The notes under the pieces were generated by a model. That model had not been told where the DNA came from. It did not search any database and worked only from the letters and a program-made list of their open reading frames with translations. Shown here one piece after another: positions 17,801 to 63,731 of a DNA stretch of 64,000 nt. Numbering within the stretch: position 1 is the stretch's first letter; every line of letters begins with the position of its first letter. The position numbers were made by a program, and so were the translations under genes. Source of the DNA: Lepidodermella squamata (Eukaryota; Animalia; Gastrotricha). The stretch is taken from contig JBLDXI010000013.1 of NCBI GenBank assembly GCA_047495785.1, positions 434,001 to 498,000 on the forward strand, in the 5' to 3' direction.

Positions 17801-19605
17801 TGCTCAAGCGGAGTAACTGAGACGCCACTGGGTTGCAGATCAAAACTCAGATGGGGTGATCCGGGTTGTCGACGCTGTTCAGTTGCTCGTTGCACAACAT
17901 TCGCGCGTATAGCATCTCGATCGGGAAGTTTGGGCTCGTCTTGATTGCCGACTTCTTGGTCATGAGTCCGAGCAGCTTTTTTAGCTCTCTCGTATTCGCG
18001 CATTGCTTGAAGATAAATTTCTTCCGTTTCATCATCAATATCACGGCGAAATTCGGAGGTTTCAAATTCAATTTCTTCAGCGCTCAGCATCCTGCGATTG
18101 ATGACAAGTTTCCATCCAGTTACGGCATACCCTACGGCTTTACGATGGTCTTTCAAATTACGCCAAGCATTGATAATCCCTCGCGTCAATGCCAGTTCTG
18201 CGGCCATTTCTGCCAGGAGTTGCCTTCGAATGAAAATCACTTGATCTGCATATGCATCGTGACGGGATTGAAGATCAGGTAAGACGGCATTGGAGGTATG
18301 AGACTGGTCTGAAATATCTTTACTAGCCAATTCATGACCAACAGCAGCTACTGCTAGACGAACTGCATCAAGCTGCTGACGCCAGTAAGTGATCAGCTCA
18401 CGACTCTGCCAGTCAATAAACGAAGAGAATAGATTTTGCAGCTTGCTGGCAAGGACGTGTTCCCCACTGCACAAATAGTGATGCGAAAATTGGAGTTTCC
18501 CGATGGCAATTTCCATGCGAAACAGTTGATCGTTCTCATCAGCAAATTTTTTTGTGCCTTCGACAAACGCTTTTCGATAGTGAAAAGGCTTATCTCCGCG
18601 AGCCCCCATGGCTGATGAAGGAGGTAAAATTCGCATGGGTTTATGCCGCAACGGATCCGGCAATGCTAACGGTTGGCCACTCTCGTCAAGCCACTCCACA
18701 GCTTTGTCCGGGGCAGTTTGATTCAGCAGTCTCTCGCGTATTCTCTCCACGTTGCGTTGAGCCATCGCAGGGCGCTCGCCGACGTAGAAGCCTTCGTCTT
18801 CTAGCAATCTGATTTCATCAGGCTTCGTAGAAAATTCATCCGGCACACCCGACGGAACATATGTATAAATTTTCTCCTCAGCTTGAGTCTGTTCGCCACG
18901 AACGGTGATGACAACGCCCCCTTTACGCCTCAGTGCATCTTTCCGAAGCCGTAACTCTGAAACGAGGAGAGGAGCATCGTCGGTCGGCTTTTCTTCATCT
19001 ACTGAAGCGATTTCCGCTTCTACGCTCGCGGGCTGGTGTTTTGGTTCATCGGTCCAAAGTGATGCTCTTGGGAGTCCATCCCAATTACCGGTGAAAAAAT
19101 TGACCTGCTCATCAGCGGTGAGCAATAGCCCCCGTTTTATCTTTGCTTCAACAGATAACTGAAAATCAACAAATTTCATGATTATTCGGCCTAGATAATA
19201 CCAGCGACTCACCTTCGCGCGGGAAGCTACAACATCCCGAAAACGTCCACGACTTGAAGATGGAACAGCAACAGACGCTTGCTATTGCAAAGATAACTCG
19301 GGTGAACACATTACTCTGTAAAACAAGTTTCACATACTTCTGATTGAACCTCGCGAATGTCTGAGTCTTCCGACTGCTGTATTCGATCTAATCGCTTTCT
19401 GGAAGATGTAGGGCGCACGGAAGCTGAATCCGGCGTAGCTACTTCGCGTTCATCTGACACATCAGGCTGCGCTTGGGGAATGGAGGCGGTGCTTATCTAT
19501 GACAATTAATGTATCGCAACCTGTGCACCTAGCATTTTTAGAATTCCGGATACTCACCTTGAGTCTCCGTCTACGAGACGTATCTCCGCCGATCTCTGCT
19601 GACAT
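14848..19605 (-). CDS. CC2D2A: Coiled-coil and C2 domain protein 2A (MKS6), ciliary transition-zone protein (multi-exon)
   Basis: EDEGFYVGERP, LALPDPL, LQFSHHYLCSGEHVLASKL, C2 domain (YAEVSFQ...PTWNE...FSPPSLQ), transglutaminase-like GDDEEHSCLL, CPLQTIDCI and C-terminal LAVHVEPYP..ILAVWVY. The 5' small exons (ATG 19605) are inferred from splice sites. Confidence 0.93.
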
Positions 19606-30100: not shown

Positions 30101-31363
30101 GAGTACAAAGGCGCCGAAAAGGACTGGGGCGATGGCGTTCGCGGTGTCCAGATGTCGGCTGCCCTCGCCGCCATCCACCGCCTGCCCATCGATGATTCGA
30201 ACGTGAAGAGCTACCGACCTCAATTGCTGTTGTTCGTCAAGTCCGAGTTCGACGCAGAAACACAGAAATACGCACCCCAACCGATTGCTGATAATTTACT
30301 GGCGCTGACCCGCCAGTTGAAGGCTGGGAAGGGCTTGGTCGTACTTGGTAGTGTGATCGAAGGCTCTTTCCTAGACAAATCGGCTGCAGCCTCTGAGTTG
30401 CGTTCCGTATTTTTGAAACGAGCTGATATCAATAAATTGAAGGCAACACCTGTTGTCGTAGTCGCTCCGACCTCCGAAATCGGCTTGGCCACCCTGGTCC
30501 AGTCGACCGGGATCGGGGCACTTCGGCCTAACACCGTGCTAGCCGGCTGGCCTCGGTCGTGGAATGCCCAAATCACGGACGATTTGTCGGAAGGCTCGTT
30601 CCATCTGCTGCCGAACTTGCTGCGAGTGACAGCGGCCGCGGACATGTCGGCGGTTATCGTGCGAAACGCAGAAAAGTTCCCAACCGGCCGGAAAGACCGT
30701 ATGATGGGCACGACTGACATTTGGTGGATCGTCGACGATTGCGGCATGTTGCTGATGATACCGTACCTGCTGCAGCAGCACCGCATCTGGGCGCGGTCGA
30801 AGGTGCGCATTTTCGCCGTGACAATGCCTGGCCGGGGCGTCGACCCGAATAAAGTCCGCGATGCGTTGAAAGAGTTCGTCTACGACCTTCGCATCGTCTG
30901 CAGCGTCGACGTCGTTGAAACAAATGAAAGCGACGTTTCGGCCTACGTCTGCCAGCGTACGCTTACAATCGAGGAGAGGGCGAAGGTGCTGGCGGATTTG
31001 AAGGCGAAACGGGCGTCATCGCCTGAACCTGGCGCCGAAAGTCCGACCAAGGCCGGCAATTCGTTATCACCCCCTGCGACGTACAGCGGCGAGGAAGCGC
31101 GTGAGCTGGTGTCGAAGAGCTTGGCATCTCGAAACCTGGCCGAGAAGCTGCAGTCCGCGCACACGCTCAACCAGCTGATGCTTTCGCGGTCGTCGGAGGC
31201 CGATCTCGTCGTGGTGAATCTGCCGAAGCCGCCGAGCCGCGCCGAGGGCGATCTCAAGTACATGGAGTACGTGGACCTGTTGAGCGAGGGATTCGCGCGC
31301 GTCTTGCTCATCCGCGGCAGCCAGAAGCGGCCCGTAGTCACGACCAAGTTCGCCGATGACTGA
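24116..31363 (+). CDS. kcc: K-Cl cotransporter-type SLC12 cation-chloride cotransporter (exons approx. 24116-24278, 27897-28151, 28202-28468, 28524-28946, 29006-31363)
   Basis: LGTLLGVFLPCIQNIFG, SISALATNGRVPGGGAYYIISRTLGPEIGGAVG, FFPSATGILAGSNRSGDLADP, LQSLTSAPRLL, PNWRPRFRFYHW and YKGAEKDWGDG. The large Cys-containing loop after TM5 is typical of KCCs. Exon 1 joins exon 2 in phase 1 across a 3.6-kb intron. Confidence 0.93.
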
Positions 31364-40885: not shown

Positions 40886-42647
40886 ATGTTGCGACGAATA
40901 GCACTGGCTTTTGTGATTGGCATATCGGTGTCGCTGCAACCCGGCTATGCGCAAGACGGTAATGGACAATACTTTATAACATTTCAATTATCGTAGCATA
41001 TTTTAGTTGGACAATATTTTTAATTCAATTTGCCTTGTATCTTTTGACAGGTGACGCGTGCACGGTGCCAGCGAGTAATAAACAACCGTTGCCGAGCGAA
41101 TTTACCGGCCGCTCGAGCATGGTACAGGTCATGACCGGATCGCCAGTGCGTTGTGCCGGCAAGCTGACCCATTTCACCTTCGTGTCAACGAACAGCTACG
41201 TCGCTGGCGTCACTTTTTTCGTATGGCGCCCGTTCGGCCAGAAACCGCGCAGTCCGTTCTTCACGCCGGTTGGCACGGTTGAGTTGGCAGGGGAAACGTA
41301 TTACCGGCCCAATACATGGGTAAACGTACCCGTCAGCCCGCCGCTCGATGTGCTCGAGGGTGATGTTATCGGCCTGTATTACGACGATTGGCGACTCGAC
41401 GACTATTTCGCCTTCATCCCAACGTCGCCACCGCAGAATTATTACCGGCGCAATTCGAACTTGACCTACGCCGAGGTACTAGTGGCGGCCAAGTCGCGCT
41501 CAGAACTTGCGTTCGAGCTGGCTTCCAAGGGCATGCTAGACTTCAGCGAAGCTTCCAAAGACCAGCGGCATATTGCTCTTCAGGCACAAATAGAAGCCCC
41601 GACACGACTTACGTTGGCTAAATTTCGCCTCGGAATCTGTCAACTACCATCCGAGGCTGGCAATTGCCTGGCATTGATACCTAGCTTCTACTACGACGCC
41701 AACATGGGCGACTGTCGGCCGTTCATTTGGTCCGGTTGTGGCGGAAACATGAACCGGTTTTACTCGGCCGAAGAGTGCGCCAGTGTTTGCCAATCGCCGA
41801 TGATCCCACCAGCGTCCGATGGCAACACGTTCCGAGGCCAGCTTAGGCAACTGATGATCCTACAGCCGACTACAACTCGACCTACAAGGCTTCAGACGCC
41901 GATACCAGTGGCAACAACAACACGGGGGCCGACTACAACGACCAGTCGAACGACAATTCCTGCGCGGACCACGCCCTGGTTCCAGATTTTCTCCAAAGGT
42001 TCGACCCCCTATCGTAGCTTGGTCGTGATAGGCTTGCAGCCTGCTGGATCTAACGAGCCGAGCAAATTGCCGACGCCAACAAGTATTTCTTCATTTTCTG
42101 TGCTTCATCCTATTTAAAATGTGTTTCGATGAAATGACAGAATGCGTCGACTTGTTCCGGACCAAGCAACGCTGTGATCGAACTATCGTCCAGACCAAGT
42201 ACTTCTTCAATGCAGGCAAAAATGAGTGCGAGCCTTTCTTTCACTACGCTGATTGTATATCGTCTGGTAACATTTTCTCTTCCAAGTAAATGCCTTGCTT
42301 CAATTACCATCGCGTCCTCTTAAATTTTGATATGCTTTTCCCAACAGTGAAGAATGTGCGTTTCATTGCGGTGTGCTCGAGCGTGATCCTTTGTTACTAA
42401 CAAGGTAAGTCAACACTTTTGTTTTCTATTGTGTTTCATCTATAGAACCGGTAAATATTTGCCTTGGCCGAAAATCTCTGCCAAAAGTTGAAATTAATTG
42501 AATAACTTATTTGCTCATAAAAACTCCAAGGGATTGGCCTTTTGTGTAAACATTTGACCGTACATCACTTTTTTTATTTTCAGAATCCGAGATCCTTACC
42601 AATCTATCGTCGGTGTCCCTCAGATGATGTTCGCAGACGCGCCGTAA
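40886..42647 (+). CDS. Secreted cluster paralog A: signal peptide - unassigned domain X - canonical Kunitz - Thr/Pro linker - atypical Kunitz (exons 40886-40958, 41051-42082, 42141-42285, 42348-42404, 42584-42647)
   Basis: MLRRIALAFVIGISVSLQPGYA signal peptide; Kunitz CQLPSEAGNCLALIPSFYYD...CRPFIWSGCGGNMNRFYSAEECASVC. All junctions are GT-AG and in frame. An alternative stop at 42406-42408 is used if the last intron is retained. Confidence 0.88.
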
Positions 42648-43774
42648 AAAATGAGGCCACTGACAATTCTTTCGCACCTGGCGTTCTCAATTCTTTTAAT
42701 CATAATATCATGAGTGAATTGCATGCTATCCTTGCTTTTCTACGATCAAATTATTTAATTGAGGCTTTTCAAAAAGCTACTGGTATTTAGAGCCTTTCAG
42801 CGGCTAAATTAATTATATTTTTTTATATCATTATTTTCTCATTCTCATATTGACCGTATTCACGAGACATGAAACTGCCAACCGATGATTTTTCCGACCT
42901 TATCAGTGTAAAATATTTTCGAGTGCTCGAACACTCTAATTTTCCTTAAAATAGTCCGCCGTCGGAAAAGGTTGAACTTGAATAAAAAAGCAGTTCGTTC
43001 ATTCATTTAAGTCGGTTTATATATAAATATCTCAGCTTTTGCCAACACAGAGGGGACAAAAAATACCGGTAACTGCGGCTTCAAGTATATATAAGTAAGT
43101 GTATAAATTTGTTCACGCTCGTTCTACGCCGTAGCAGTGAAAACAACGGCGAGGTGCGAACACCGCAGGTATAAATAGATAAAACTGCAGCGCAAAGCCG
43201 CTTTGAGAATAACAAAAAAACAGGTTTCATGTTGGCGCATGATTTACATATCTAGGAGAAATCAGAAAGACGCGTTGAACGAAAAAACACTTATTTGACG
43301 TCTACGACCTGACTTATACTCGGCAAAAAACGTGACGGCGGCTGTTTGCGGGACATGGGGTGTTACATAGTGCAATGTATGAGAAATTGAAAAACATGAA
43401 AATTTCAAATAAATTGATCATATTCGCTGTGTGTTCAGGCGGCAAAAAGTGTCGCTAGAGTTTGATGAGCAAAAATAGACAACAGACGTGCCGCCGCCGC
43501 CACAAAGGTAGATATAGCTACGAGACGTCGTATAGCAATGATTAAAACAAGCAGCAAATACTTATTGCCATTAGACATACCAAGCGTGAATAATCGTCAA
43601 CAAAAATGTGGCAGCAGAATATAAAAAACGTTTGCTTCTTCGTGACGGGGCTCACGGGTGCAAAATCTTCAGCTGCTTTTTCCTATAAGACAGACAGCTA
43701 ATGCCTTATTAGCTACTTTAACATGCCTCTTTTCTTTAGCAGGTTTCTAGTTAATGATATCACATGGTTGTAAC

Positions 43775-45566
43775 ATGATTGCACTGTTGCGCCTCTCCAT
43801 CGCGATCGGCGCGCTCGTACCCATCAGCTATCAGCAGGCTCAAGGCTCATACCCTGACTGTAATGAATAATGTGAATTCTAGTATAATGATTTCATTTCC
43901 TTCATTTTCAGCCTGCATCGCGCCGTCGATTCGAGCACTTTCCAAGGAGTTCGAATTTCGCTCATCGATCTTTCAATTATTTCCGAAAATTCCCATTTTG
44001 TGCAACGGCTATGTTACAAAATGGGCATTCTTATCAAAAAATCAAAATGGCACTGGCATGTATCTATCGGTTTGGAGAGCGACAGACAATCCTAATGTAT
44101 TTCGGTACGGTTTGTTCGGTTTTTTTCCTATTAGCTCCTATCCATCAAATTGAGCATCCTTCAACTTGAACTTGGAGCTGCGAGTTGCGACTGAAAGCTG
44201 ATTGCTGAATATTGAAGTCGCACTCAAGCTGTTGGAAAAATGAATTTCCTAGATAGAATTATCTGCTGTAGCAAGGGTTGCCAGGGTTGGTATAGGTGAA
44301 TTGGTACGTAGCTACTATATCAACTTCTAAATGAGCACACTTTTAGTTATCATTATTCTCAAATAAAATCACATTTATAATTTTCACGAAAATTTCTCCA
44401 CTAAATCCGTGGAATTATTTAGCATCGATCTCAAAAATAATCAATTATTACGAATATATAACGAAGTGTAATACCTATGCATCCATTTTTATAGACAAGT
44501 TGGAGTTACTCGAATCGACAACTTTACCGTTGCGACAGACGCATGGTCCGAGTACATCGTTCCGAATCCTTTCCCAGTTCTGGCCGGCGACATTCTCGGC
44601 CTGTACTACCAGATGTGGCAGGTTTTGTGGCCTTACTCTGGCCATGTGCCGGTGACAACGCCCTACTCGAAAGCGCCGAAAGGTCTCGAGCAAAACTACG
44701 GCGACGCACTCGTGCTCAATTATGACGCCTCTGATTTAGCAAGAATGGTCGGCAGTGACGGCGTGCCGCAAGTAGACATGTCCTCAGCTGCTAGTGTTGC
44801 GAGATTCCCGGCAATTCAAGCCGTTGTAGACCCGGCTTGGACACTATCATCTTCCACAACTTCCACTACGACGACTACGACAACGACAACGACTCCAATG
44901 ACGACGATGAGAATAATTACGACTCGACCGACGACTACGACGACTACGACTTTCAGGCCTCTGCCCCCAATCACGACTTCGACTACGTCAACTACCACAA
45001 GATTGACGCCGACCACCACGGTGACTACAACGCCAACGACTCAACTGCTGACTACAAGCACGACTACAATGCCTCCAACAACGGTTACAACGCCTTCAAC
45101 CACGACTACCTGGATGCCAACTTTCGAACTGACAACTCCGGAGCCGCCAACAACTCGCGTTACAACGTTGCTAACAACTACAATCCTTCTTCCGGTGACG
45201 CCGCAGCCATCGGCTGTGCGGAATCCACGCCGCTGCCTGAGTCCATTCAAGACACAGGGTCGCTGCAACTACAACAAAGTGACGCTGCGTTGGTTCTTCG
45301 ACACGTCGACGCAGTTGTGCGAAATGTTTTGGCACTACGACTGCGTTGTCTCGTCGAACATTTTCATCGGGCGCGAGTCGTGCGAATTCCACTGCTGCGA
45401 TCTCATTTCTGGCCGTCTGTCAGCCAACGATCTCGACAAACTGCCGCCGTTGCCGTCTGGTGCCGATGTTAGCAACAACGAAGTCATCGCTAATTACGAC
45501 GAGCAGACCGGCTTCGTGCGCGCCGAACTTAAAACAACACCACCGCCTTCCAATGCGATGGCGTGA
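43775..45566 (+). CDS. Secreted cluster paralog B: signal peptide - domain X - long Thr-rich mucin stalk - atypical Kunitz (exons 43775-43859, 43912-44104, 44495-45566)
   Basis: MIALLRLSIAIGALVPISYQ signal peptide; SCIAPS...ILCNGYVTKWAF...GMYLSVWRA...FR|QVGVT...FPVLAGDILGLYYQMW. C-terminal CLSPFKTQGRC...RWFFD...CEMFWHYDCVVSSNIF...CEFHC. Confidence 0.88.
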
Positions 45567-46956
45567 AGATGCACATTTCATGCTTTTTAGTTTCACTCCT
45601 AATAGAATTTTTTACTGTCTTATACAACGTCGCATTATTACACGCTTTTTGTCACCACCAGATGTTAAGGCAATAATAATTTTTCGAGCTGCCGAATTTT
45701 TTGAGAAAAATAAAGTTTTTCGGTTGAAACTTGTCCTCATCCGAAGCGCATCCTTTTAACATGTTTTTTTTAGCATAATACAACGTAATAGAAAAAATAG
45801 TCTTAACTGAAGACGAGCAAGTGCAATGGCCGGAATGTAGAATTTCTATCATAATGTCCGTTGTTTGGTGCAACTACTTCTGCGGAGATACAGGTCGGCG
45901 GAAAAAACAATTTCCACCAACGAGCAATTATTTTTTGGCGTAAATAGCGCCGGTTAAATCTGAATTTTTTACAACACCAGGGTAGAGTTTTCCGATGGTC
46001 GAATTCGAGTTTGGTGGTCAAAGCTTGGGCAAATACGGCGGTTATTTACTTGACCGCTGGCGATGCGGAGGCACGCTGCCGCCTGCTAATTGCACGTGAA
46101 GATGGGCCGATATACTACATCCTGCAGTATTGGCAAAAAAGGCGCACAATTTGGTGCAGCGGACGCAGTGACCACATCGCGTGGTGATCGGGGCAGCGCG
46201 GCGATTCGGCGACACGCTGCCACTTGTTATTTGCGGACGATCCAGCGCAACAGCGATATAGAGACTCGAGGCGTCACACAAGTCGGCGTCATGTACAAAG
46301 CAAATAACATCGTCGACGACGACGACGGCGCCGCGCTCGCCTGCTGAAATTTCGCCGCAACAGGTAGCGCGCCGATTTTTTAATGACTGCGCGCGATGCG
46401 CCGGCGCGTATTTACGCACGTGTACGCCTGTACCAGCGTCTCTCAAATTGTCGCCGCGCATGGCGATGGTGGAGGTGGTGTGCGAGCCTGAAGACGCGCG
46501 CGCCGACGTCAAGTGCATTACCATTTAGCCGCGATTTGTGTTCAACATATCATATACACAAGATAGGTGTAATAAAATATCGAAAGAGCAAACATCGAGC
46601 GCGCACTTTCAGCACTGCCCACAGCCTGCATGCAATACAGGTAACAACGTTATTAGGTCTGCAAAATTAGTGCTTTTCCACGCGCGTTTACTCTCCAGAT
46701 GCACCCACTCGTCAAATAGCTCCTCTGCCTGCTACTGATATTGATACTTTGCGAACTGTTCCTTCTCCGCCTGCGTTCCTTCGCATATCCGCGCGTGAAG
46801 TAGGTCACAATAACATTAGCGACGGCTCGGTACAGCGTTACACGCCGTTGCCACTACTAGCAGGTATCTGTCTGCCCACTCATCCGAGCTCGGCTTTTTT
46901 CTACCCTACCGCAGTGAGTTCGTCGTCGCTGGTTCCTTAATTTATCACTCGGCGAC

Positions 46957-49210
46957 ATGCTTATCAGCCCATCCTCATCGCCAACTGCTAGCAATAGGCA
47001 GTGGCGCCAGTTCAGTGCCACCTTAATCGCTGCAACCCTACTCATCGACCACGCAACCCTCGCCCAACGGCAAGCGGGTAAGAGTGTTCAATTATTTTCC
47101 AATTATTTTTGTTGATAAAATATACTGCTGATTAGGAGATTAATTAACTCAACAGCATTTTCTAAAGATTTTCCAAACTCAAGAAATTGTATAGCCAAGC
47201 TGAAGCAGTTAATGGCTGTTATTAGCAAGATGCTACAACTAGACCTTAGTTTCAACTTAAGGAATTTTAGAAATATATCTTTCGACTGCATAATTCTTTC
47301 GAAAAAATCAGCATGATTCATGATGAAAATTGCGTTATCAATGCCAGGGCTGGGATATCAGACTAAACGCGATGATTATTGGTCTTTTCCTATATTAGTA
47401 GATTAGGAATGCTCAAGTTCAGTACATAGTGAGTTCTCTCGTTAATACGGCTGGTTAATCAGCCATAAAACCCTTCTGTTCAGGGTCGATTGCCACAAAA
47501 AAGTTCCCATGGCTCACTGAATAGGAGATTTTCACTGGTTTCTTTTTCATATTCAGGCAACAACAATAGAGGAAATAACGGCCGTGTTCAGGCGTGTTAT
47601 CAGCCGGTCGATTTCGGCAACTGTCAGATGACAGCGTTGCGGTACTTCTACGACGCGAATCTTAATTCATGTCGAGTTTTTATCTACGGCGGTTGCGATG
47701 GCAACGACAACCGCTTCGACAACCGAGAGCAGTGTACGCGTATCTGCAACGCCGGGCCCGAGTTGCCCGCGGAGTCGAATCTGCCGCAAAACTTCCCAAC
47801 CTACAACGACGCCGGCTCAGCAGTATGCTCGCTGCCGGCCGACCCAGGAACTTGTACAGATACTAATCTCATCCAATATTACTACGACTCGGTCACCGAT
47901 TCTTGCCGGCTATTCGTTTACGGTGGATGTGGTGGAAACGCAAATCGCTTCAGGACAAAGGTTTGAATCCCATTTTTCTTTTATTTGTCAAGAGAAGATC
48001 TAAAATTATATAATTTTCGATATTTAGCTTACTTGCCAAGTCGCGTGTGGTGGCTCATCGGATGAAGAAACGACACCAGCTATGACTCAACGGCCGCAAC
48101 CTCAAACATCGCCTGGTCGAATCACCCCACCGCGGCCGCCGACGCCTCCGAGACCGACGCTTGTGCCTCAAGTCTCCACGAATCCTCCCCTTCAAACCAC
48201 CAGGAACCCCTGTTAGTTTGTTTATTTTACCTCAAGTTCCAAGTTTACGGGTTTTGTTTTAGATTGCCAAGTTCCGGCTCGCCAGCTTACGCTTAAGACG
48301 TTCAATTACCGCACATCATTCTTGCACATTTTCCCGCAAATCAACATCACGTGCTCGGGTATCATACGTTCGTGGTCCTTTATCCCACGCGTGGCCGTCG
48401 CCGACGGGCTCTATCTGGCAGCATTCCGCGCCAAAACACCTCAAGTAAACGCGACGACGTACCTACTTGTTGGCATGACGCCAATTTTCAACTACAAAGT
48501 GAATCGCAACGTTTGGAACGACTACGCCGTACCTGAGAACAAACAATTCTCAGTGCAGGCCGGCGACGTGTTAGGGCTGTTCTACGAGAATTGGGACATC
48601 ACCGATGACATGTCAGTCGTCGCGATGGCGGACAAGTACTCCCCAGACTACGATATGCTCAAAACATCGTCCGAGTTGTTGGCACACGTGCAGCAACGCG
48701 GCCGCGAGGGTGTCGTCTACGACATGAACTATCAAGGCTACTTGGACATGTCGCTGAGCGTGCGAACGTTCAGATACCCGGCGATGCGCGCGAACATCGA
48801 ACCTGGCGCTCGAGCGTTGCCGCCGACTTCAACGCTGCCTCCGCCTGATCCGAATGCCGGCCGTCTGCCAGTCGTTAACACCAGGCAAACAACAACACCA
48901 CTGGGTGGAAATTCACCTGGTTTGTCATGAACTCTACGTTTCACTGTTTCGAAATGTATTTGAATTTTTTTTACCAGCTTGCTTGGACGAATTTCAAACA
49001 TCGCAAACTTGTCTGGATAACGCGCTACGCCGTGGCGTTGACTCGCGAGTGTTCAAGGCGCGCTGGTTCTTCGACATCACTGTCAAAATGTGCGCCATGT
49101 TTTGGTACGTGCCCGACTGTTACCGGTCGGCGAATCTCTTCGAAACGGAATACGACTGCCGAGCGACGTGCTACGGCTACATGGCAACAACAACGCCAGG
49201 CGATCTCTAG
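46957..49210 (+). CDS. Secreted cluster paralog C: leader - 2 canonical Kunitz - Pro/Thr linker - domain X - atypical Kunitz (exons 46957-47077, 47557-47960, 48028-48211, 48263-48919, 48978-49210)
   Basis: Two FxYGGCxGNxNRF Kunitz domains; YCQVPA...ITCSGIIRSWSF...GLYLAAFRA...LVGMT...FSVQAGDVLGLFYENW. Phases are consistent at every junction. The exon 1 leader is a weaker signal peptide. Confidence 0.86.
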
Positions 49211-49925
49211 TGCAGCTGCTCTACCGAAGAAACTTTCGCATTTTTTCGACAAATCAATCGTAGATCTTCTTTTGTCACATCATCATCTACATTTGTTTCG
49301 ATTGGCTTGTAATATAGTTTTATTCGCTCCGTTTTCGCTGCAATGCTGGCGCAGAGTGAAGGCAACGAGATAGTCACATAGAGCCCATATTTCTATTAAG
49401 CTACTATCAAATTGTCTGCGGACAAGTTCCTCTTTTTTACTCAAAGTAATTATATCGTGCAAAAAATAAAGTGTTTTTTATGAGAAGAATTTAAAATGCG
49501 AAAGATGATGCAAATTATTATATAAACGAATGAATTTTTTATTCAGTCCGAATCGAAAAATCAAATAAAAATTATTGAACAATTGTTGTAAAAATAGCCA
49601 TAAATACGGTTGTAACGCTTTTTTATTCACCTAATGGCTTACAAAACTAAAATTTGTCTCTACACGGAATAATTGTTTTTACGTTATCATGAATATATTA
49701 TAATGCAATTACTTTCGCCTTTACTCACATCAATATCATTCGAAATTTTCGTCTCTTTCTTTGAAGAACAATCTGTGTTTCAGTGTTTAAAAGTTGAAAA
49801 ATAAAAGCTAAAGAGATGTCTCGCGCTGCGCTATTTATAACTATTAAAAAAAGCTTTCAGTATGCATACATCGGTATCGATAAAAATTCGCTGATGCGGA
49901 GGTGATGGAAAAATCTCGAGACCGA

Positions 49926-50535
49926 CTACTTCTCACCAACTGGCATGCCGTGCTGCAGCACGTCCTTGATAACTGATTCGATTTGATCGTGTAGCTGTTG
50001 CCGCATTTCCTGCTTTTTCACCTGTTTCAACCACAAAAAGAAAGTCGTTGGCTCGCGGCCGCAAAGACCGGCCGAGTGATAGAACTTGGGGCAGTCCATA
50101 GTTGATTTCAAACGTGTTTGCAACATTTTGGCAATGTTCCTCAGCATCTTCGTCCGGCCAGCTTTACCCTTACCTGTTGTCAATAATATGTATATAGGAT
50201 GGATTGTTATTGGACTAATTAGTATTACCGTAAAGAAGGCGGGATAGATCCTTTCGAGACACTACGTCTTCGTGGCCATCAGCTTGTTCGTGGTTGTCGG
50301 ATGATTTTTCAGAGTGCTCCTGGTCTGCTAATACTTTATTCTCGGATTTCTGCAATAGTTCAGCCGACTGTTTTTTCTGCGAAAATTTAATGCCTCCAGA
50401 ACGTACGAGAAATTCGAGTTTTTTTGATAGCATGCCATTGTCGTTGGAATTGGCTGCTTTGTCGGCGCGAACCAGCACAGCCGAGAGACAAGCCACGACA
50501 CATGCAATGTATAAATATAGCGAGAATGATTGCAT
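49926..50535 (-). CDS. Small secreted protein (184 aa), possible peptide precursor (exons 50535-50229, 50173-49926)
   Basis: Signal peptide MQSFSLYLYIACVVACLSAVLVRA. A 55-nt GT-AG phase-1 intron joins the two ORFs. Contains RK-DLSRLLY-GK and MDCPKFYHSAGLC-GR. Confidence 0.75.
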
Positions 50536-52365
50536 CTTTCTGCGCCCACTTCAAAAGAGGCTACTAAAAATCGGTGGTATAAGCTCACAGTTTTGCTATA
50601 GGCTGACACCTAGGGAAAAATGAGAATATTTTATTTCTAAAACCTGTAGATTGCCATCGTGTTGTTGTGATAATTATAATTTTGCGGAGTTGTGAACTCG
50701 TAGTAGATGGCAAAAATAAGATTCACACATGCGATGATCGGAAGAGGAAGTTTAACGCGCTTAAATTGCGCTGATAAGTCATTCTTAGCGGCACAGACAA
50801 GAGCCTCTGTCCGAAGAAAAAAGTATAAAAGCTGTTAGATCTCATAACCAAGCGCACGCTTCATTTGAGCTCGTATCTTCTCCATCCATCGCCTCGCTAC
50901 TTCCTGACGCGCCTTCGCCCACTCGAATAGAGTAGGTAATAACTGCTAACAGCTTTTTATGGCGAAGTGTGTATGGCAAATTGAATTTCAAACTCTTGAA
51001 CATACAAATTGATTACTGATTTTAACTTCGTCAAGTTGCGCATAAGGTAATAACGCGATAAAAAAAATATACCTGCCGAAGAAAAGAAAAAACAATTATC
51101 GTTGAAAGCTGTTAGTTTCGCAGCATTGATATTTAATGGGCCGTCGAGTCACCGAGCTATCACGTCAGCATAGAAACGCCTACTCAAAATGGCATTCCCG
51201 TTCTTATTAGCTATAAGGGCTTCTTCCGGGTGGAATTTTTCAATATAATTTTGTATGACCACTCAAAGCCCTAGCTGTAATTGAGAATTACGCGCTGGAT
51301 AAGCCGCCTTTGTGCCGATAAATCGCTTCCGGTAACCTGGCTGGTTTTAGCCTTGATTGGCCAATGAGTTGATCTTGCTTGTAATGAGTTTATCCTGCGA
51401 TTTAAAATCGACTTGTAAATCCTGATGGGATCAAGTTCCTGATTCAAAGACAAAAAAGAATACATAGCTACGCCCGATCGTACGGGTTCCAGAGGCCTCG
51501 AAAAATAAGGATATACGTATCGGCGTTTTGCAAGTATAATTTTCCTGATCAGCAATTTTTTGGCTTTTGGAAGGGCAAACGACTACAAACGTTGTTTTAA
51601 ACCGTATAAGATGCTCACTGATTTGCATATCAGCGATTTTGAACACGCTCAAGTTCACGGCACTTCAGTGCAATTATTCATCACTCCGAAACGTTCCACT
51701 AAAAACTCGTCCTCCGGCAGAAAAGCATATTGATCTGAATGAAAATCTACTGTATACACTCAAAGTTTCCGTCATAGTATCTGGCGACCCTATCGAAAAC
51801 GATTCAATTAATCGCTGTGAGTATCCTGTTCATAATACGTTTGATAGGACGATATGCATACGCTGCATTGCATATAATTTTAAGCATAGGTATATTGAAA
51901 ACATCTGTCATCAACTTGACCTAAAGCGCCATTTTGCACAGCCACGATGGCACCGCCCGCCCACGTTGTGTGCCTTTCGTTGAAATTCAACACACTATAC
52001 GCTGAAGTATCATCATCATCATCACCGCCTGCGCAAGATGAGTAAGTGTACGGCGCGTGGTTGCTGCCAAGAAGAACGCATGGGTGTGGAACTCGATGAC
52101 GTCTAGGTACACGTGTATCGCTGGAGGCAAACGCGTTGCGCATACCTACCTATCTGCGCGCTCTGTATGCGCAACGTGTGGTGTACAAAGAAGACACGTG
52201 TTTGAAAACATTTGCAATGTTATTGAAATTTTTCTGAAGCCTACGCCGCTCACGTTCACTCGTTGTTATCACTCGTTTGAAGCGACGCCTTGTCGATAAA
52301 GACAACAACTCATCGTTTTAGTAAACACATTACTGCTAGAATAACCGGAATCGAGCTAAAAAATC

Positions 52366-53962
52366 ATGACTACAGCCGGTGTTCGATTTCTACTCGTATC
52401 ATTTATTGCAATTATCCAAGTTTCAGCTCAAACAAAGAAAAGTAAATTTCAATCAACATGTTTCAATTCGTTTTAAAAATATCCAAATTCACCTCCCAGA
52501 TCTCTGCTCGCTGAAGCCAGACCCAGGACCATGTTCTGGCGTTTCGATGCAGTATTACTACAGCTCTTCAAAGCGCCAGTGCATACAATTCTTCTACGGT
52601 GGATGTTTAGGCAATGGCAATCGATTCGACTCAAAGGCCCGATGCGAAGCCGTTTGCATGCCGCCGAAGATCGATGTAGAAGAACCTGAGTTTTATGAAA
52701 AATCGGCTTTCGCTGACGTTGTAGCAAACGTGGATGCTTATCAATCGTTGTCAAGTAAGTACATTTCGATTGTCAATTCTATATTGGGGGAAATTTGTTA
52801 CTCAATCAACAGGTTGTACTGCGCCAAGTAACTACTTGTCGACAACATCTTCCCAATATTGGATGCGAAGTTCGTTCTTCCACGTTTTTCGACAGCTGAA
52901 GGTCCCGTGCAATGGCGTTGTGGTCAAATGGCAGGCGATCTCACGCGTTAACCAACTAGACGGCCTTTACTTGACCATCTGGCGGCCGTTGCCAACTAAC
53001 AAACTGATGTTTAAAATGGTCGGCATGACAAAGGTGACGAAGCTAGCCGTTACTCCTAACGTCTGGACTGATATTCCGGTCAAAGATCGCTTCCCAGTTT
53101 CGGCGGGTGATGTTGTCGGATTTTTCTACGACAGTTGGCTGACAACCGATGCGTCAACTTCTATTCCGTTGATGCCGGGCAGCAACAATTACGATCCATC
53201 GACCGGATTCGTTTCAGATGAAGCTTACGTTACTCAGCTCCAAGCTTCGGACATAGTCAATTCGACTAGTGGTAAATTAGCCTATTATCCCTTTTTGCTG
53301 ACTATAAAATGTCATCCTTTTTAAGGAACTGTCGACCTAAGTGGAGCTGTCAAGGTATCACGAAAGCCAGCTCTGGCCGTTTTCGTCGATCCGACATCAT
53401 CAGACTCGCCAGCTCCGACCCAGAGTCCCAATACCGTCACAAATAACACGCCGAGAAATACCAACCCTAATACCTTGCCGACCATCTTTAGTCGTGGCAC
53501 TACCAGCCCAATCAACAACAACAATAACAATAACAACGGGAAGAATGAAAGTAAGATACGGCGATAAAATCAAATTCTCATCCAGTTTGACCTACACTGA
53601 ACTGTTTTAAAATAGATTGTCTCGATTCGTTCCGAATGGCTGGGGCGTGCAACTACGACATCAATGCCTTTAAAACTAGATGTGAGATTTGAAATTCGTT
53701 GTTTCTCCTTACAATTTGTTGCCTCTGCTTTTAGGGTACTTTGATCAACCAGACGGCCGTTGTGAAATGTTCTGGTATTACCCGGATTGTGTTAGCTCTT
53801 CAAATATTTTCCAAACAAAGTGAGTTTACAAACAACCAATGCAAATGTCGAATTTATTTGTTCAAATTATACTCGCGCAGGGAAATCTGCGAAATGAACT
53901 GTCGGGCATATTTCAATGTTTCCTACCACCTGGATGAAAGCAAATGGAAACAGCAATATTAG
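52366..53962 (+). CDS. Secreted cluster paralog D: signal peptide - canonical Kunitz - domain X - Thr/Asn/Pro linker - atypical Kunitz (exons 52366-52441, 52500-52754, 52813-53271, 53326-53550, 53616-53681, 53735-53819, 53881-53962)
   Basis: MTTAGVRFLLVSFIAIIQVSA signal peptide; Kunitz CSLKPDPGPCSG...FFYGGCLGNGNRF; VPCNGVVVKWQA...GLYLTIWRP...MVGMT...FPVSAGDVVGFFYDSW. All six introns are GT-AG and in frame. Confidence 0.88.
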
Positions 53963-55184
53963 GCTTGTTTTAAATGTGGCGAGAGTTTGGCAATCTGCAG
54001 AAATCAATCATATTAATCCAGTCTCATTGTTGAAAGTTGAATCCTGTGTGTATAATATTGTGTCAATGATGATATTGAATTCATACCGAGAATTTGTCAG
54101 TTTGAATAATAAAAAAGGAACAAGTCGCCAGGAGAAGTCCATTTTCAAGTTCACTTCAGCATGCGATGTGGTTTGCGTTTTCGACTTATTTCAGGTTTAT
54201 GACAAGAGATCGTATTTGCTTTTACTGGCCGCGCAGAAAAATGTCTTTTAAACAAACAGAACAGGAAAAAATAACTTGAATTCGCGCAACTTGTTAGCTC
54301 ATTGTTTATTTAAAATTTAAAACTTCCTGAGCGGCCGAGTGAGCGCCGACTATGTGCGTGAGCCAACAATCGCTATTTGTTGTTTGTTATTTTAGAGCCA
54401 ACAGCACGATAATCGGCTGCCGCACCATTGCGAAAAACGTAATTTAAATGTTTTGGGACTGTGAAAAATCTTGGTTCAACACTGGCCGATTCCAGGCCGT
54501 GTTTTTGAAGTGTCTCCTAGGCGCGCGCTTGTTATTTTGATTATTTTCATTTCACACTGGCGTTACTGTAGAAAGGTTATTAAAAATTGAGCGCAGCGCC
54601 AAAAATGAGAGAAAACCACCATGTTAACAACAGACAACAGCTTTTCCGCTGCTCGCACGTCCCTTGAAAAATCGGCGGTAGCATTTTTAATACAATTTTT
54701 GTAATATAATTACCACCGCCGCTCGCCGTCAAAGTACAAACGGCGGGCCGACAATAATTGCGCGAATGTTATACTTAACACGTGGCTTTTCATTTGCCAT
54801 TGAAGCCCGATACTGGTATTATACTGCCACCGAGTTCCTGCCTTGCGTGTGCTTCGCGACACTAGCTCAACGTATTGTTGTTTTTTATTTGAACAACTGT
54901 CTCATTACGCAGGTGCGTAACAACAATTGACGTAACTGAGTTACATGTTTTTAACGAGCGCCTATACGTTTCAAGTTAATTACCTACTCGCTTCGAAATT
55001 GAAGTTTGTTTACTTTGCGCGACGTGCATAGAGCTATTGCACAGCAATTCTTGGTGAGAGAATCGTCGCAGTCTTACCGAAAACAATGAATACCCGCGCA
55101 TTTTTTTCGCACTATGAACTTCTTTAGAAATTTTTAACATCTGATTTGTCTCAGGAATTTTATCGAAATATCTTAACAACAATC

Positions 55185-56534
55185 ATGTCATTACTCGCCG
55201 CCCTAAGAATATTACTCTTCGTCTGTGCCACTGTTAACATCATCAATGGCCAGAGTAAGCTAGTTAGCTTTTCAATATCAACATGAAGATTACATTTAAT
55301 TCTTTAAAGATTCCTGCGTTGTACCATCGCCGCTTGAAGATCAATCTCTGTTTACCCTGCGAAGGTAACTACTTGAAGTTGGGATATATAAATTATTCAG
55401 ATTTATCAACATTTTATAGCTCTTTGCTGCAAGTTTACACATCGCTAACGATACCATGTAACGGGTCAGTGGTATCGTGGCAATTCGTTCCACGGGTTGC
55501 ACAGATATCCGACTTGTATCTAGCGGTGTTTCGCCAAATGAAGCAGAGCTTGCCCTACTTCACAATGGTGGGCTACACGAAGGTGCAAAGCTTTACAGCT
55601 CCTTACGTCAACAAATGGGTCAGATTTCCGGTAGCAAACCCGTTCGACGTCGCGAAAGGCGATGTTCTAGCGATTTTTTACGACAACTGGCAAGTTCTCG
55701 ACGCTGGCGCTTCTATTCCAGTAACCATGCCGCCACTTGGTGGGTTGACTTACGTTGCTAGACATGACTTCAACTCCATCAATCGCGAGATCACTTCGAA
55801 CAGCCAAGGGATACTGGATTTGACCTTAGCCGAAAAAACGATACGGCTAGCTGCTGTTCAAGCCGAAGTTTACAACGGAGCAACTACAACTTCAACTTCA
55901 ACGACAACTACAACAGCTTCAACAACGACAACGACAACGGCCTCTACAGCGACTACGACGACACCACGTTCGACGGCTTCAACGACAACTACGAGAACAT
56001 CCTCGTCGACTACGACGAGGCCCACGACAAGCCGGACGACGGCAACCCAGTCAACTACGACGTTCATTACGCCATCGCCTCCTGACTACAACGGCAACTG
56101 GGACTACAACGAATTCACGGAACCTTCGACCACCCCGACGACGCGACGAACATCGACCAGGACAACAACGGAGCCTGCAGCGTACACTACCACGCCAGCT
56201 TACATGCGTATTTCTGAACAGATTTCATGATTCTATGCGTTATTTCCTGCGTTAAATATTAGGCTGCCGACAGAGTGTTCAGTCGATGAATGCCTGTAAA
56301 ATTATGTACTACGAAGAGAAATGGTTCTTCCGACCCGAAATCGGCGGCTGTCAACTCATATGGTGGTTTCCTTACTGCATGCAGGATAATGGCAACCTCT
56401 TCCAATCACGGTAAGTTTCTTTGAAATATTATTCAACTTCGCTATTTTTGCAACATGATTTTAGCGAGGAGTGTGAACTAATTTGCGCTCGTTACTTGAC
56501 TTACAAGCCGATGGCAAGATTGCGATTTCACTGA
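55185..56534 (+). CDS. Secreted cluster paralog E: signal peptide - domain X - Thr-rich mucin stalk - atypical Kunitz (exons 55185-55254, 55310-55364, 55420-56207, 56263-56410, 56465-56534)
   Basis: MSLLAALRILLFVCATVNIING signal peptide; SCVVPS...IPCNGSVVSWQF...LYLAVFRQ...MVGYT...FDVAKGDVLAIFYDNW. C-terminal CRQSVQSMNAC...KWFF...CQLIWWFPYC...NLFQSREECELIC. Confidence 0.88.
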
Positions 56535-62000: not shown

Positions 62001-63048
62001 GATTTTGTTCCGAAATTTCTGGTAATGATTGCATTGATCCCATCGTATCTAACGATTTTTATTGGCATTGGTTGCATATCATGCGTTGAGCCTCGCTCCT
62101 CCCTATTCCGTCGTTCGTCTCCCACTTCTCCTCGCAATTTTCCTGTTTAACGCTATTTCGCACCGATGATGCAGCTTTAAAATTCAAGTGCGTGTGTACC
62201 ATTCTTTCCGTTCCTTATTTGTTCAAATTTTAGTAATAATTTTCTGTTGCGAAGGAATTTGTAAGACAATAATTACCATGCGAGAAAATCTTAGCTTGCA
62301 TTTTTGTTTTGTTCGGGTTTTGAAGACTCAAGATTTCGATAATGATTGGCAGCTGCTAAGCACAGCAACGCCTTTACCACGATTGAAGTTAGTAATCTGA
62401 AGCCTGTTTGATATCCAATGAATTCGCTTTGCGGATGCAACAACTCAGCGAACGCTTATTCTTGGCGAACTTTACAATCCAATTCCCTTTAGTACCCAGC
62501 CATTTGATTTAGGCCTCTTGTGAGCTGGAAACTTGAGTTACGCCATCTGACTCACCGTTGGTCACATGTAACCCGCTTAAGGCAACATGTAAAATTGCGG
62601 TCAAAAGATGGACTGTTCGAAATATCCATTTAACGCTTTTAATTGATCAGTCTTACTTTCTCCTTTTTATGCTAATTTATTTTTTTATTTTAGGGTATAA
62701 TTTTATTACATTGATAATAATTGTTTAGTATATTACATGTTTGTTAAATCGATCTATGCACAGCCTTTCTATAAATTCGCTGATTATTGGTTGCCTACGG
62801 GCTGAATGCACATTTTTACTGCGTTCATCAGTAATACGGCGCCACATCGTGAACTTGTTCAACTACCGCCCATCTCGTCATCTTCCTGTGTTCCCAGTTG
62901 CCTGTTTAGCTTCGCATTCGAGCAGCCCACTCAAGCGGCTCCAATTGTTGAACATTCGTTGTTGAGGCATCTATCCAGTTGCTCTGGTCCCCGTGAATTG
63001 GCTTTCAAACCATTTTCAGCTAACAAGACCAGCAGCTTCAAAATCAAG

Positions 63049-63731
63049 ATGAAACTATTCGGCTGCGTCAGTGATCGCAGCGACTCCGATACTCAAAGTA
63101 AAAAGATCGAAAAGCAGCTGAAAGAAGACAAGCAGAAATATAAATCCACCCATCGACTTCTTCTTCTGGGTTTGTTGTGCTTTGTATCAGAGTTTTCAAA
63201 TATTCTTTTGTGTTTCATGTTAGGTGCTGGAGAGTCTGGAAAATCCACCATCGTAAAACAGATGAAAATTTTACATATCAATGGATTTTCTAAAGAGTAA
63301 GTTATCGCTTCTAACTCATAACTGCATCATAATGAATTTTCCAACAGCGAAAAAGTCGAAAAAGTCATGGATATCAAACGCAATATTCGTGATGCTATTC
63401 TTGTAAGTTACTTGATCTAGGTCAAGTGGGTCAAACTAAGCTATGTATTTCTTTCAGAGCGTTGCCGGTGCGATGGGAACTATAAGCCCACCTATAGAGC
63501 TTGCTGATCCTTCTAAGAAGCCCAGTTTTGACTACGTGCTCAATGAAGTCAGCAAAAATACGTATGACTACCCCTCTGTAAGTTATACAATTAATTCAGG
63601 TGTTGGAATTTAGAATTATGTTTCTTCAATTAGGAATTTTTCGACCATGTTGCTAATCTATGGGCTGACAAAGGCATTCAACAGTGCTTTGATCGTGCAA
63701 ACGAATACCAGCTAATAGATTGCGCCAAATA
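63049..63731 (+). CDS. GNAS: Heterotrimeric G protein alpha-s subunit, 5' part (exons 63049-63169, 63224-63296, 63348-63402, 63458-63577, 63633-63731; continues beyond window)
   Basis: [43 protein letters not shown]...[10 protein letters not shown]...[39 protein letters not shown] and NEYQLIDCA are Gs-class signatures. Confidence 0.93.

What the first reader, a model, noticed from the sequence alone, without database searches (positions are those of the whole stretch)
41059..55870. Domain X: a conserved ~170-aa beta-rich extracellular module with no family name I can assign
Seen in all five genes (approx. 41059-41595, 43914-44835, 48265-48800, 52815-53390, 55315-55870). Consensus: C-x-x-P-[SA]...R-[ST]-S-h-h-[QH]-h...h-x-C-x-G-x-h-x-x-[WF]...[GD]-h-Y-L-x-h-[WF]-R...VG-x-T...[ND]-x-W...[FL]-x-V-x-x-GD-[VI]-h-[GA]-h-[YF]-Y-x-x-W...h-D-h-[ST]...R-x-x-A-h-x-A-x-h. 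The two invariant Cys suggest one disulfide, and the alternating hydrophobic pattern suggests a beta-sandwich. Conserved surface-type Trp/Tyr would fit glycan or polymer binding (inference). From memory only, the 'L-x-V-[YW]-R ... GD-h-h-G' pattern resembles an unannotated segment of polycystin-1-type ectodomains.
Basis: partly seen in the sequence, partly recalled or inferred. Interest (0 to 1): 0.75.

Follow-up and report, generated by a model that had tools for sequence, protein, structure and literature searches.

The report
Unnamed lectin-like domain, also in polycystin-1
Five neighbouring genes of a small animal each start with the same 175-residue sandwich-shaped outer module that no family library names, and the same module turns out to be widespread in animals, including the outer part of invertebrate relatives of the kidney-disease protein polycystin-1.

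Summary
Five in-frame copies of a ~175-aa domain lie at the stated coordinates. They are 22-34% identical. Copies 2 and 4 are each split by one intron. Each copy follows a signal peptide or a Kunitz module, and Thr-rich linkers and Kunitz modules follow it.

Pfam (2025 copy) and PDB sequences give no match. AlphaFold models of copies 1 and 5 (pLDDT 94 and 90) show one jelly-roll beta-sandwich. Its nearest neighbours (Z 8.7-10.8) are lectin-like or polymer-binding modules and phage tail-tip domains.

The family is large:
- at least 150 matches in this genome;
- 1,684 representative proteins elsewhere, all named ones "uncharacterized", from echinoderms, hemichordates, molluscs and nemerteans;
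- a few bacterial proteins that lack the two cysteines.

Both cysteines are 98-99% conserved in animal copies.

Ambulacrarian polycystin-1-like proteins carry two canonical copies. Fifty polycystin-1-family proteins carry a diverged copy with a Cys-rich loop insertion (hhalign 97.7%, E 1.6e-12). Vertebrate PKD1 could not be tested.

Function is untested; ligand (glycan or polymer) binding is the best inference.

The scan noted this domain before on other DNA of this genome (s1-430933).

The parts
40886..40954 (+). Gene 1 signal-peptide exon (ATG at 40886, hydrophobic N-terminus); the 3' end is approximate
   Evidence: Orthologue P0040 has a signal peptide directly before the domain.
41059..41601 (+). 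Domain X copy 1, single exon, 181 aa
   Evidence: AlphaFold model pLDDT 93.6, pTM 0.89.
41635..41793 (+). Gene 1 Kunitz/BPTI domain directly after copy 1 (context)
   Evidence: Pfam PF00014, E 3e-18.
43775..43846 (+). Gene 2 signal-peptide exon; the 3' end is approximate
43914..44109 (+). Domain X copy 2, first exon (first Cys to N-V-F-R-Y plus one base)
   Evidence: GT donor at 44110.
44500..44834 (+). Domain X copy 2, second exon (G-V-T-R-I-D to A-V-V-D-P); intron 44110-44499
   Evidence: Orthologue P0038 is colinear across the junction.
45234..45395 (+). Gene 2 atypical Kunitz domain after a Thr-rich linker (context)
   Evidence: Pfam PF00014, E 2.7e-6.
47592..47963 (+). Two canonical Kunitz domains upstream of copy 3 (context; probably the same gene)
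   Evidence: Pfam PF00014, E 5.5e-32, two stretches.
48265..48807 (+). Domain X copy 3, single exon, 181 aa
   Evidence: Orthologue P0035, 62% identity.
52366..52431 (+). Gene 4 signal-peptide exon; the 3' end is approximate
   Evidence: Orthologue P0024 reads signal peptide, Kunitz, then domain X.
52505..52660 (+). Gene 4 Kunitz domain upstream of copy 4 (context)
   Evidence: Pfam PF00014, E 6e-19.
52815..53271 (+). Domain X copy 4, first exon
   Evidence: GTAAAT donor at 53272.
53326..53393 (+). Domain X copy 4, second exon (T-V-D-L-S-G to V-F-V-D-P), after a 54-nt intron 53272-53325
   Evidence: Orthologue P0024 is colinear.
55185..55253 (+). Gene 5 signal-peptide exon; the 3' end is approximate
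   Evidence: Orthologue P0021 has a signal peptide and then the first Cys of the domain.
55349..55873 (+). Domain X copy 5, single exon, 175 aa
   Evidence: AlphaFold model pLDDT 89.7, pTM 0.86.
56265..56507 (+). Gene 5 C-terminal atypical Kunitz-like exon after a Thr-rich linker (context)
   Evidence: tblastn with orthologue P0021, 56% identity.

Best explanation
Domain X is a genuine, ancient extracellular domain family that Pfam does not name.

Shown:
- It folds as a ~150-residue jelly-roll beta-sandwich of the galactose-binding-domain-like class, with one short helix.
- In animals it carries two almost invariant cysteines, one at the very start and one in the C-x-G motif.
- In the five window genes it sits directly behind the signal peptide or behind N-terminal Kunitz modules, and ahead of a Thr/Pro-rich linker and Kunitz modules.
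- The family is hugely expanded in this genome.
- Elsewhere it is shuffled with adhesion and recognition modules: Sushi, PAN, MAM, discoidin, SUEL and C-type lectins, ApeC, SRCR, VWD.
- Canonical and insertion-bearing copies are built into invertebrate polycystin-1-family ectodomains.

Inferred:
- The two cysteines form a disulfide that pins the N-terminal segment to the sandwich.
- The domain is a non-enzymatic binding head that recognises a glycan or other polymer, or possibly a protein, on a surface or in a secreted matrix.
- It thereby positions the glycosylated stalk and the protease-inhibitor modules in mucus, glue, cuticle or on microbes.
For: - Reality and homology of the five copies.
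- No named family: Pfam scans; PDB sequence profile.
- Fold: models. Both models independently return the same neighbours: Bxb1 tail tip Z 10.1/10.8 over 153-156 residues, Cwp84 lectin-like domain Z 9.9/7.0, acetylxylan-esterase N-domain Z 8.7/8.7, polyvinyl-alcohol-esterase N-domain Z 9.1/7.4, PHR Z 7.9/5.7, and F-lectin/CBM32/discoidin about 5-6.6.
- The language-model Atlas puts it among unnamed animal clusters (Porifera, Annelida). The nearest named families are Lectin_like, PHR and DUF4082.
- Secretion: signal peptides.
- Family size: at least 150 matches in this genome; 96 matches in 200 kb sampled from other arrays; 1,684 representatives at E<=1e-3 and 259 at E<=1e-10.
- Cys conservation of 99% and 98%; no conserved His, Ser or Glu that would suggest catalysis.
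- Partner domains.
- Polycystin link.
- One-to-one orthologues of all five genes at 47-62% identity, two of them adjacent in another species, so the array is old and kept.
Against: - No ligand, binding site or expression was shown.
- Structural Z of 9-11 is only modestly above the background of 7-8 that the tool reports for models without a clear match, so it gives the fold class, not the function.
- Several neighbours (PHR, phage tail-tip and capsid-decoration proteins) bind proteins, not sugars.
- Loop variability is spread over both ends of the sandwich and does not mark one binding face.
- The disulfide was not measured.
- InterPro member databases other than Pfam, and ECOD/CATH profiles, were not available, so a name may exist there.
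Confidence: 0.6

Rival explanations
1. The domain is a protein-protein interaction or self-assembly module rather than a lectin. It would cross-link or oligomerise secreted matrix proteins, as PHR domains and phage tail-tip or capsid-decoration jelly-rolls bind proteins.
For: - PHR domains (Z 5.5-7.9) and phage tail, baseplate and capsid proteins (Z 8.6-10.8) are among the best structural neighbours.
- Many proteins carry 2-5 tandem copies, and this genome has arrays of copies every 0.7-0.9 kb.
- Five copies alternate with discoidin domains in a sea-star protein with the architecture of the cohesive glue protein Sfp1 (Sfp1 domains as listed in PMC7037938).
Against: - Lectin-like and polymer-binding modules score equally well.
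- The partner domains are mostly glycan-recognition types.
- No oligomer prediction was possible.
Confidence: 0.25
2. The domain is only a diverged member of an existing named family (for example DUF4082, PHR, CBM-type or discoidin) that single-sequence Pfam scans miss, so nothing new needs naming.
For: - One of 24 paralogues hits DUF4082 at E 0.0011.
- The Atlas lists DUF4082, PHR and Lectin_like as the nearest named clusters, at 0.85-0.87.
- The fold class is shared.
Against: - Twenty-three of 24 paralogues and all 116 foreign proteins give no hit over the domain.
- The DUF4082 model finds nothing in this genome despite at least 150 copies.
- Identity to structural neighbours is 5-16%.
- Atlas scores under 0.9 are leads only.
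- All named database entries are 'uncharacterized'.
Confidence: 0.12
3. The similarity is a compositional or chance motif in non-coding or pseudogenic ORFs.
For: - ORF lists are mechanical.
- Copies 2 and 4 are interrupted.
Against: - Full-length alignments with E down to 4e-27.
- Correct GT..AG introns confirmed by colinear orthologues.
- Orthologues at 47-62% identity in another species.
- Confident folds.
Confidence: 0.01

Closest known systems
Unannotated ectodomain region of polycystin-1-family proteins (between the WSC/lectin modules and the PKD repeats)
   Same: It is homologous by profile-profile comparison: hhalign 97.7%, E 1.6e-12, 139 columns, with reversed controls at 0-0.2%. It shares the motifs G-x4-W-E, Y-L-Q-V-Y-R-P, G-D-V-x-x-W-Y and L-R-A-H-V. 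Ambulacrarian proteins also have two canonical copies before the WSC domain (99.0% and 99.2%).
   Different: The polycystin copy lacks the N-terminal Cys partner pattern. It carries a ~55-65-residue, six-Cys insertion in the beta3-beta4 loop. It is part of a giant 11-TM receptor, not a small secreted protein. It was seen in 50 invertebrate proteins and not detected in the lancelet proteins sampled. Vertebrate PKD1 was not tested.
Lectin-like domain of Clostridioides difficile Cwp84, and the N-terminal CBM-like domains of acetylxylan esterases and polyvinyl-alcohol esterase (PDB 4d59/4ci7, 7tog, 9kqz)
   Same: Same jelly-roll sandwich over 143-152 residues, Z 7.0-9.9, rmsd 3.1-3.7. These are surface or polymer-associated accessory modules.
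   Different: They are bacterial, with 8-16% identity and no sequence-profile match. They lack the conserved Cys pair and the C-x-G-x4-W and G-D-x-x-G-x-x-Y signature.
PHR domain (MYCBP2, BTBD2; Pfam PF08005)
   Same: Beta-sandwich of similar size, Z 5.5-7.9. It is the nearest named animal cluster in the Atlas, at 0.87.
   Different: It is cytoplasmic and binds proteins. There is no Pfam hit.
Discoidin / F5-8 type C, F-type lectin and CBM32 modules
   Same: They belong to the galactose-binding-domain-like fold class. They are extracellular glycan binders and occur in the same proteins as domain X.
   Different: They match only at Z 4-6.7 over about 105-115 residues, with no sequence relation. 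Domain X is about 30 residues larger and has a helix before the last two strands.
'PCDG-WRF' domain of a ten-gene lectin-like/mucin/Kunitz array elsewhere in this genome (earlier scan note s1-430933)
   Same: The motif P-C-D-G...W-x-F is the C-x-G-x4-W-x-F core of domain X. The Kunitz-bearing arrays on contigs C7 and C32 match the X profile.
   Different: These are different paralogues. Identity to that note's exact coordinates was not checked.

Membership tests
Any Pfam-A family (2025 copy) | A profile-HMM match over the domain at or near the gathering score | tested here: not met
   There was no hit at E<=1 on the window copies. At E<=10 on 24 paralogues, only one isolated DUF4082 hit appeared, at E 0.0011. 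None of 116 foreign proteins has a family over the domain.
Galactose-binding-domain-like jelly-roll fold class | A two-sheet jelly-roll beta-sandwich that superposes on members over most of the domain | tested here: met
   Two models, pLDDT 93.6 and 89.7. Z 8.7-10.8 over 143-158 residues to lectin-like, CBM-like and tail-tip jelly-rolls; Z 4-6.7 to CBM32, F-lectin and discoidin. Foldseek alone gave no match at E<=1e-3.
DUF4082 (PF13313) | A Pfam profile match | tested here: not met
   One of 24 paralogues matched, at E 0.0011 and below the cut-off. The model finds nothing in the whole genome.
Polycystin-1-family ectodomain X-like domain (unnamed) | Profile-profile homology over the full domain | tested here: met
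   hhalign 95.8% against 24 paralogues and 97.7% (E 1.6e-12, 139 columns) against 81 domains; reversed controls <=0.2%. The reciprocal HMM hits X proteins in two halves that flank the insertion.
Polycystin-1-family ectodomain X-like domain (unnamed) | Presence in vertebrate PKD1 around the LDL-A motif | not testable with these tools
   No vertebrate PKD1 sequence was returned. No PDB entry covers that region. It was not detected in lancelet polycystin-1-like proteins.
LDL-receptor class A module (for the Cys-rich insertion in the polycystin copy) | A Pfam PF00057 match | tested here: not met
   There was no Ldl_recept_a hit at E<=1 in P0058 or P0186, nor at E<=0.01 in P0211 or P0193.
Disulfide-stabilised extracellular domain | Two conserved Cys close enough to bond | tested here: inconclusive
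   Conservation is 99% and 98% in 81 domains, and bacterial copies lack both Cys. The distance could not be measured because model coordinates are not returned.
Lectin / carbohydrate-binding module | A demonstrated or conserved ligand-binding site | not testable with these tools
   Only fold neighbours and partner domains point this way. Loop variability gives no single face.

The most novel reading that the evidence does not exclude
Domain X defines an undescribed, ancient extracellular domain superfamily. One diverged member would be a core, so far unannotated, ligand-binding domain of polycystin-1 in animals generally, including human PC1. There the motif annotated as an LDL-A module would really be a Cys-rich insertion in a loop of this sandwich.
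Probability: 0.3. Interest if true: 0.8.

Novelty: new member of a known kind. Interest (0 to 1): 0.62.

Why it matters
A domain family with more than 1,600 representative proteins, hundreds of copies in one small genome, and no name in Pfam is a real gap in annotation.

Naming it would annotate long "uncharacterized" stretches in three kinds of protein:
- invertebrate adhesive-type proteins, such as a sea-star protein with the architecture of the glue protein Sfp1;
- molluscan astacin/ApeC proteins;
- polycystin-1-family receptors.

If the insertion-bearing copy is also present in vertebrate PKD1, it would:
- define a folded domain in a part of the ADPKD protein now drawn as linker plus an LDL-A motif;
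- give missense variants there a structural context;
- point to a candidate ligand-binding module for a receptor whose ligand is still unknown.

For this animal, the five genes are a conserved set of secreted head-stalk-inhibitor proteins, plausibly from mucus, glue or surface defence.

Tried and rejected
- The word-index search with copy 1 found nothing. With a 116-protein alignment it returned only two of its own members. So the phyletic range rests on the full HMMER search.
- The PDB sequence profile gave only chance hits at E>=0.5.
- The DUF4082 lead was not supported.
- PF23317, listed for the polycystins, is YVC1_C (a channel part) and is irrelevant.
- I tested whether variable loops cluster at one end of the sandwich, as in CBM32 and F-lectins. 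They do not: loops at both ends vary, so I make no binding-face claim.
- I tried to place the organism by its polycystins. Best identities of 30-33% are spread over several phyla, so this was uninformative.
- A search for the polycystin insertion-bearing copy in this genome with P0204 matched only the C-terminal parts.
- The search for related loci could not use the alignment because no stretch was conserved enough.
- Spliced products of copies 2 and 4 were not joined.
Full report
**Setting.** The window is G000:C13:434001-498000 of a 121-Mb animal genome with long exons and very short introns. The region 40.9-56.5 kb holds five same-strand genes.

**Observation.**
- Six-frame reading and motif location place five in-frame copies of a ~175-aa segment:
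  - copy 1: 41059-41601
  - copy 2: 43914-44109 and 44500-44834
  - copy 3: 48265-48807
  - copy 4: 52815-53271 and 53326-53393
  - copy 5: 55349-55873
- Copy 2 has a 390-nt intron, with GT at 44110 and AG ending at 44499. Copy 4 has a 54-nt intron (GTAAAT...TTTTTAAG).
- Both splice positions are confirmed by intron-free orthologous ORFs from another species that keep the same residue count across the junction (P0038, P0024).
They were aligned and searched separately by reference, and the joined step was left out.
- The copies align end to end at 22-34% identity. Pairwise BLASTP gives 38-89 bits, E 1e-8 to 4e-27.
Only its start for copy 5 (34 nt early) and the missed intron in copy 4 need correction.

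**Gene context.**
- Signal-peptide-like first exons start at 40886, 43775, 52366 and 55185.
- The orthologues read as follows:
  - P0021: signal peptide, domain X, Thr-rich stretch, atypical Kunitz
  - P0040: signal peptide, X, Kunitz, Pro/Thr-rich tail
  - P0024: signal peptide, Kunitz, X
- Pfam finds Kunitz_BPTI next to every copy and nothing over X itself.
- Each of the five genes has its own orthologue at 47-62% identity in metagenome-derived contigs. The orthologues of genes 3 and 4 are adjacent there. The array therefore predates that species split and is maintained.

**No name.**
- hmmscan against Pfam-A (24,736 models) gives no hit at E<=1 on the window copies.
- At E<=10 on 24 paralogues, one isolated DUF4082 hit appears (E 0.0011).
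- No family lies over the domain in 116 foreign X-containing proteins. Their other domains are Sushi (17), Kunitz (8), PAN (3), MAM, EB, LDL-A and cEGF.
- The DUF4082 model finds nothing in this genome.
- A 24-sequence profile finds no PDB sequence at E<0.5.
- Every database name recovered for a member is "uncharacterized protein", apart from names that come from other domains.
- Four literature searches found no description.

**Fold.**
- AlphaFold2 with a 24-paralogue alignment gives pLDDT 93.6 / pTM 0.89 for copy 1 and 89.7 / 0.86 for copy 5. Both have the same order of about ten strands and one helix before the last hairpin.
- Foldseek finds no PDB match at E<=1e-3.
- Exhaustive structural alignment of the two models gives the same neighbours independently:

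| Neighbour | Copy 1 model Z | Copy 5 model Z |
|---|---|---|
| Mycobacteriophage Bxb1 tail tip | 10.1 | 10.8 |
| Phage phi812 baseplate | up to 10.6 | 7.7 |
| Cwp84 lectin-like domain | 9.9 | 7.0 |
| Polyvinyl-alcohol esterase N-domain | 9.1 | 7.4 |
| Acetylxylan esterase N-domain | 8.7 | 8.7 |
| PHR domains | up to 7.9 | 5.5-5.7 |

- F-lectin, CBM32 and discoidin follow at Z 4-6.7. Sequence identity to the neighbours in the table is 5-16%.
- The tool's stated background for unmatched models is Z 7-8. This therefore fixes the fold class (galactose-binding-domain-like jelly-roll) and not a specific family.
- The language-model Atlas agrees. All 30 nearest clusters are unnamed animal proteins (Porifera, Annelida). 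The nearest named ones (0.85-0.87) are Lectin_like, PHR, Glft2_N and DUF4082.

**Size and range of the family.**
- The five-copy profile finds at least 150 exon-level matches in this genome, with 207 candidates and the scoring cap reached.
- In 200 kb sampled from other arrays I count 96 matches of two kinds. On C7 and C32, X is interspersed with Kunitz. On C19, C15 and C55, X recurs every 0.7-0.9 kb on one strand without Kunitz, which indicates multi-X proteins.
- A full HMMER search of 1.84 billion representatives finds 1,684 proteins at E<=1e-3, 259 at E<=1e-10 and 35 at E<=1e-30.
- Named members come from a sea star, a scallop, gastropods, nemerteans and hemichordates. Two bacterial members are Candidatus Entotheonella and a deltaproteobacterial MAG.
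- The bacterial copies keep the G-x4-W ... R ... V-G ... G-D-x-x-G core but lack both cysteines.
- In 81 aligned domains the first Cys is 99% conserved and the C-x-G Cys 98%. Trp is 98%, the V-W-R Arg 93%, G-D 85/91%, the following Gly 91% and Tyr 96%. An extra Cys pair occurs in 34 of 81.
- No conserved catalytic-type residues are seen.
- In 98 of 149 top proteins the first copy begins within 45 residues of the N-terminus.

**Partner domains.**
- Astacin-ApeC-CUB-Kringle-C-lectin-Sushi in gastropods.
- Collagen plus EGF, and PAN, in nemerteans.
- LamG, SRCR and TIG; Sushi and HRM.
- A 3,207-3,686-aa sea-star protein has five copies of X alternating with five discoidin domains, followed by VWD, C8, TIL, SUEL lectin and EGF. 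That is the domain set reported for the cohesive glue protein Sfp1 (PMC7037938). I did not compare it with the Sfp1 sequence.

**Polycystin-1.**
- Two top hits are annotated polycystin-1-like (Ptychodera, Glandiceps) and have REJ, GPS, PLAT, PKD_channel, WSC and PKD domains.
- I fetched 120 proteins with the conserved C-terminal part of one of them and scanned them locally.
- Two canonical X copies (about residues 45-335, before WSC) occur in hemichordate, sea-urchin and crinoid proteins and, more weakly, in Lingula. hhalign gives 99.0% and 99.2%.
- A third region (about 590-830) shows the X motifs in order, with a ~55-65-residue, six-Cys insertion exactly in the beta3-beta4 loop.
- A model of this region finds it in 48-50 polycystin-1-family proteins of echinoderms, brachiopods, molluscs, annelids, nemerteans, cnidarians, crustaceans and rotifers. 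It does not find it in the lancelet proteins sampled.
- A 33-sequence alignment of the region matches the 81-domain X alignment at 97.7% probability, E 1.6e-12, over 139 columns. Reversed-sequence controls give 0-0.2%.
- The reciprocal HMM hits X proteins as two halves around the insertion.
- No Pfam family and no PDB entry covers the region, and Pfam does not call the insertion LDL-A.
- The standard description of human PC1 lists LRR, PKD, C-type lectin, an LDL-A motif, PKD repeats and REJ (PMC10487028).
No vertebrate sequence was available to test it.

**Mechanism.**
- Shown: a secreted, disulfide-type, non-catalytic jelly-roll placed at the N-terminal end of stalk-and-inhibitor proteins. 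It is massively diversified and recurrently combined with recognition and adhesion modules.
- Inferred: it is a binding head for a glycan or polymer (about 45%) or a protein partner/self-association (about 25%).
- The loop-variability test gave no preferred face, so no site is proposed.

**Novelty.** This is a new, unnamed family within a well-known fold class. An earlier follow-up in this scan reached a similar reading for a ten-gene array elsewhere in this genome (s1-430933). The polycystin-1 link and the insertion-bearing copy were not in the notes I could see.

Noticed in passing
G000:C24:4.16-4.64 Mb and other contigs (outside the window): The genome has at least 53 matches to the polycystin cation-channel family (PF08016). 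About 25 of them lie in one cluster on contig C24, which is a large expansion.
   Followed up: no
L039, L040 (G000:C19:850001-880000); L041 (C15:4980001-4990000); L044-L046 (C55): Domain X recurs every 0.7-0.9 kb on one strand with no Kunitz between copies. This suggests genes that encode many tandem X domains, unlike the X-mucin-Kunitz genes of the window.
   Followed up: partly
P0049 (Candidatus Entotheonella, 913 aa) and P0085 (deltaproteobacterial MAG, 920 aa): Bacterial proteins carry two or three X-like repeats that lack both conserved cysteines, next to LamG-like or thrombospondin type 3 repeats. One host is a sponge symbiont. The direction of any transfer is unknown.
   Followed up: partly
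P0026/P0156 (Patiria miniata, 3,207-3,686 aa): A sea-star protein with the domain set of the glue protein Sfp1 has five X-like segments alternating with five discoidin domains. These would fill its unannotated gaps.
   Followed up: partly
window 42170 and 53737 (+ strand): My small Kunitz model finds further Kunitz-like matches downstream of copies 1 and 4. Genes 1 and 4 may therefore carry an extra Kunitz module.
   Followed up: no
window 28028-31363 (+), 14848-19212 (-), 62806-63300 (+): The neighbouring genes look ordinary: a long-exon cation-chloride cotransporter-like ORF of 798 aa, a large two-ORF gene on the minus strand, and the start of a G-protein alpha subunit. None of these was scanned.
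   Followed up: no
alignment of 81 X domains: A second pair of cysteines, at positions matching residues 25 and 140 of copy 1, is present in 34 of 81 domains. This suggests a subfamily with two disulfides.
   Followed up: no
G000:C25:2052295-2052795 and C26:318006-318506; C30:1448187 and C50:90896: Pairs of X matches on different contigs have identical scores. These are probably uncollapsed haplotypes or very recent duplications in the assembly.
   Followed up: no
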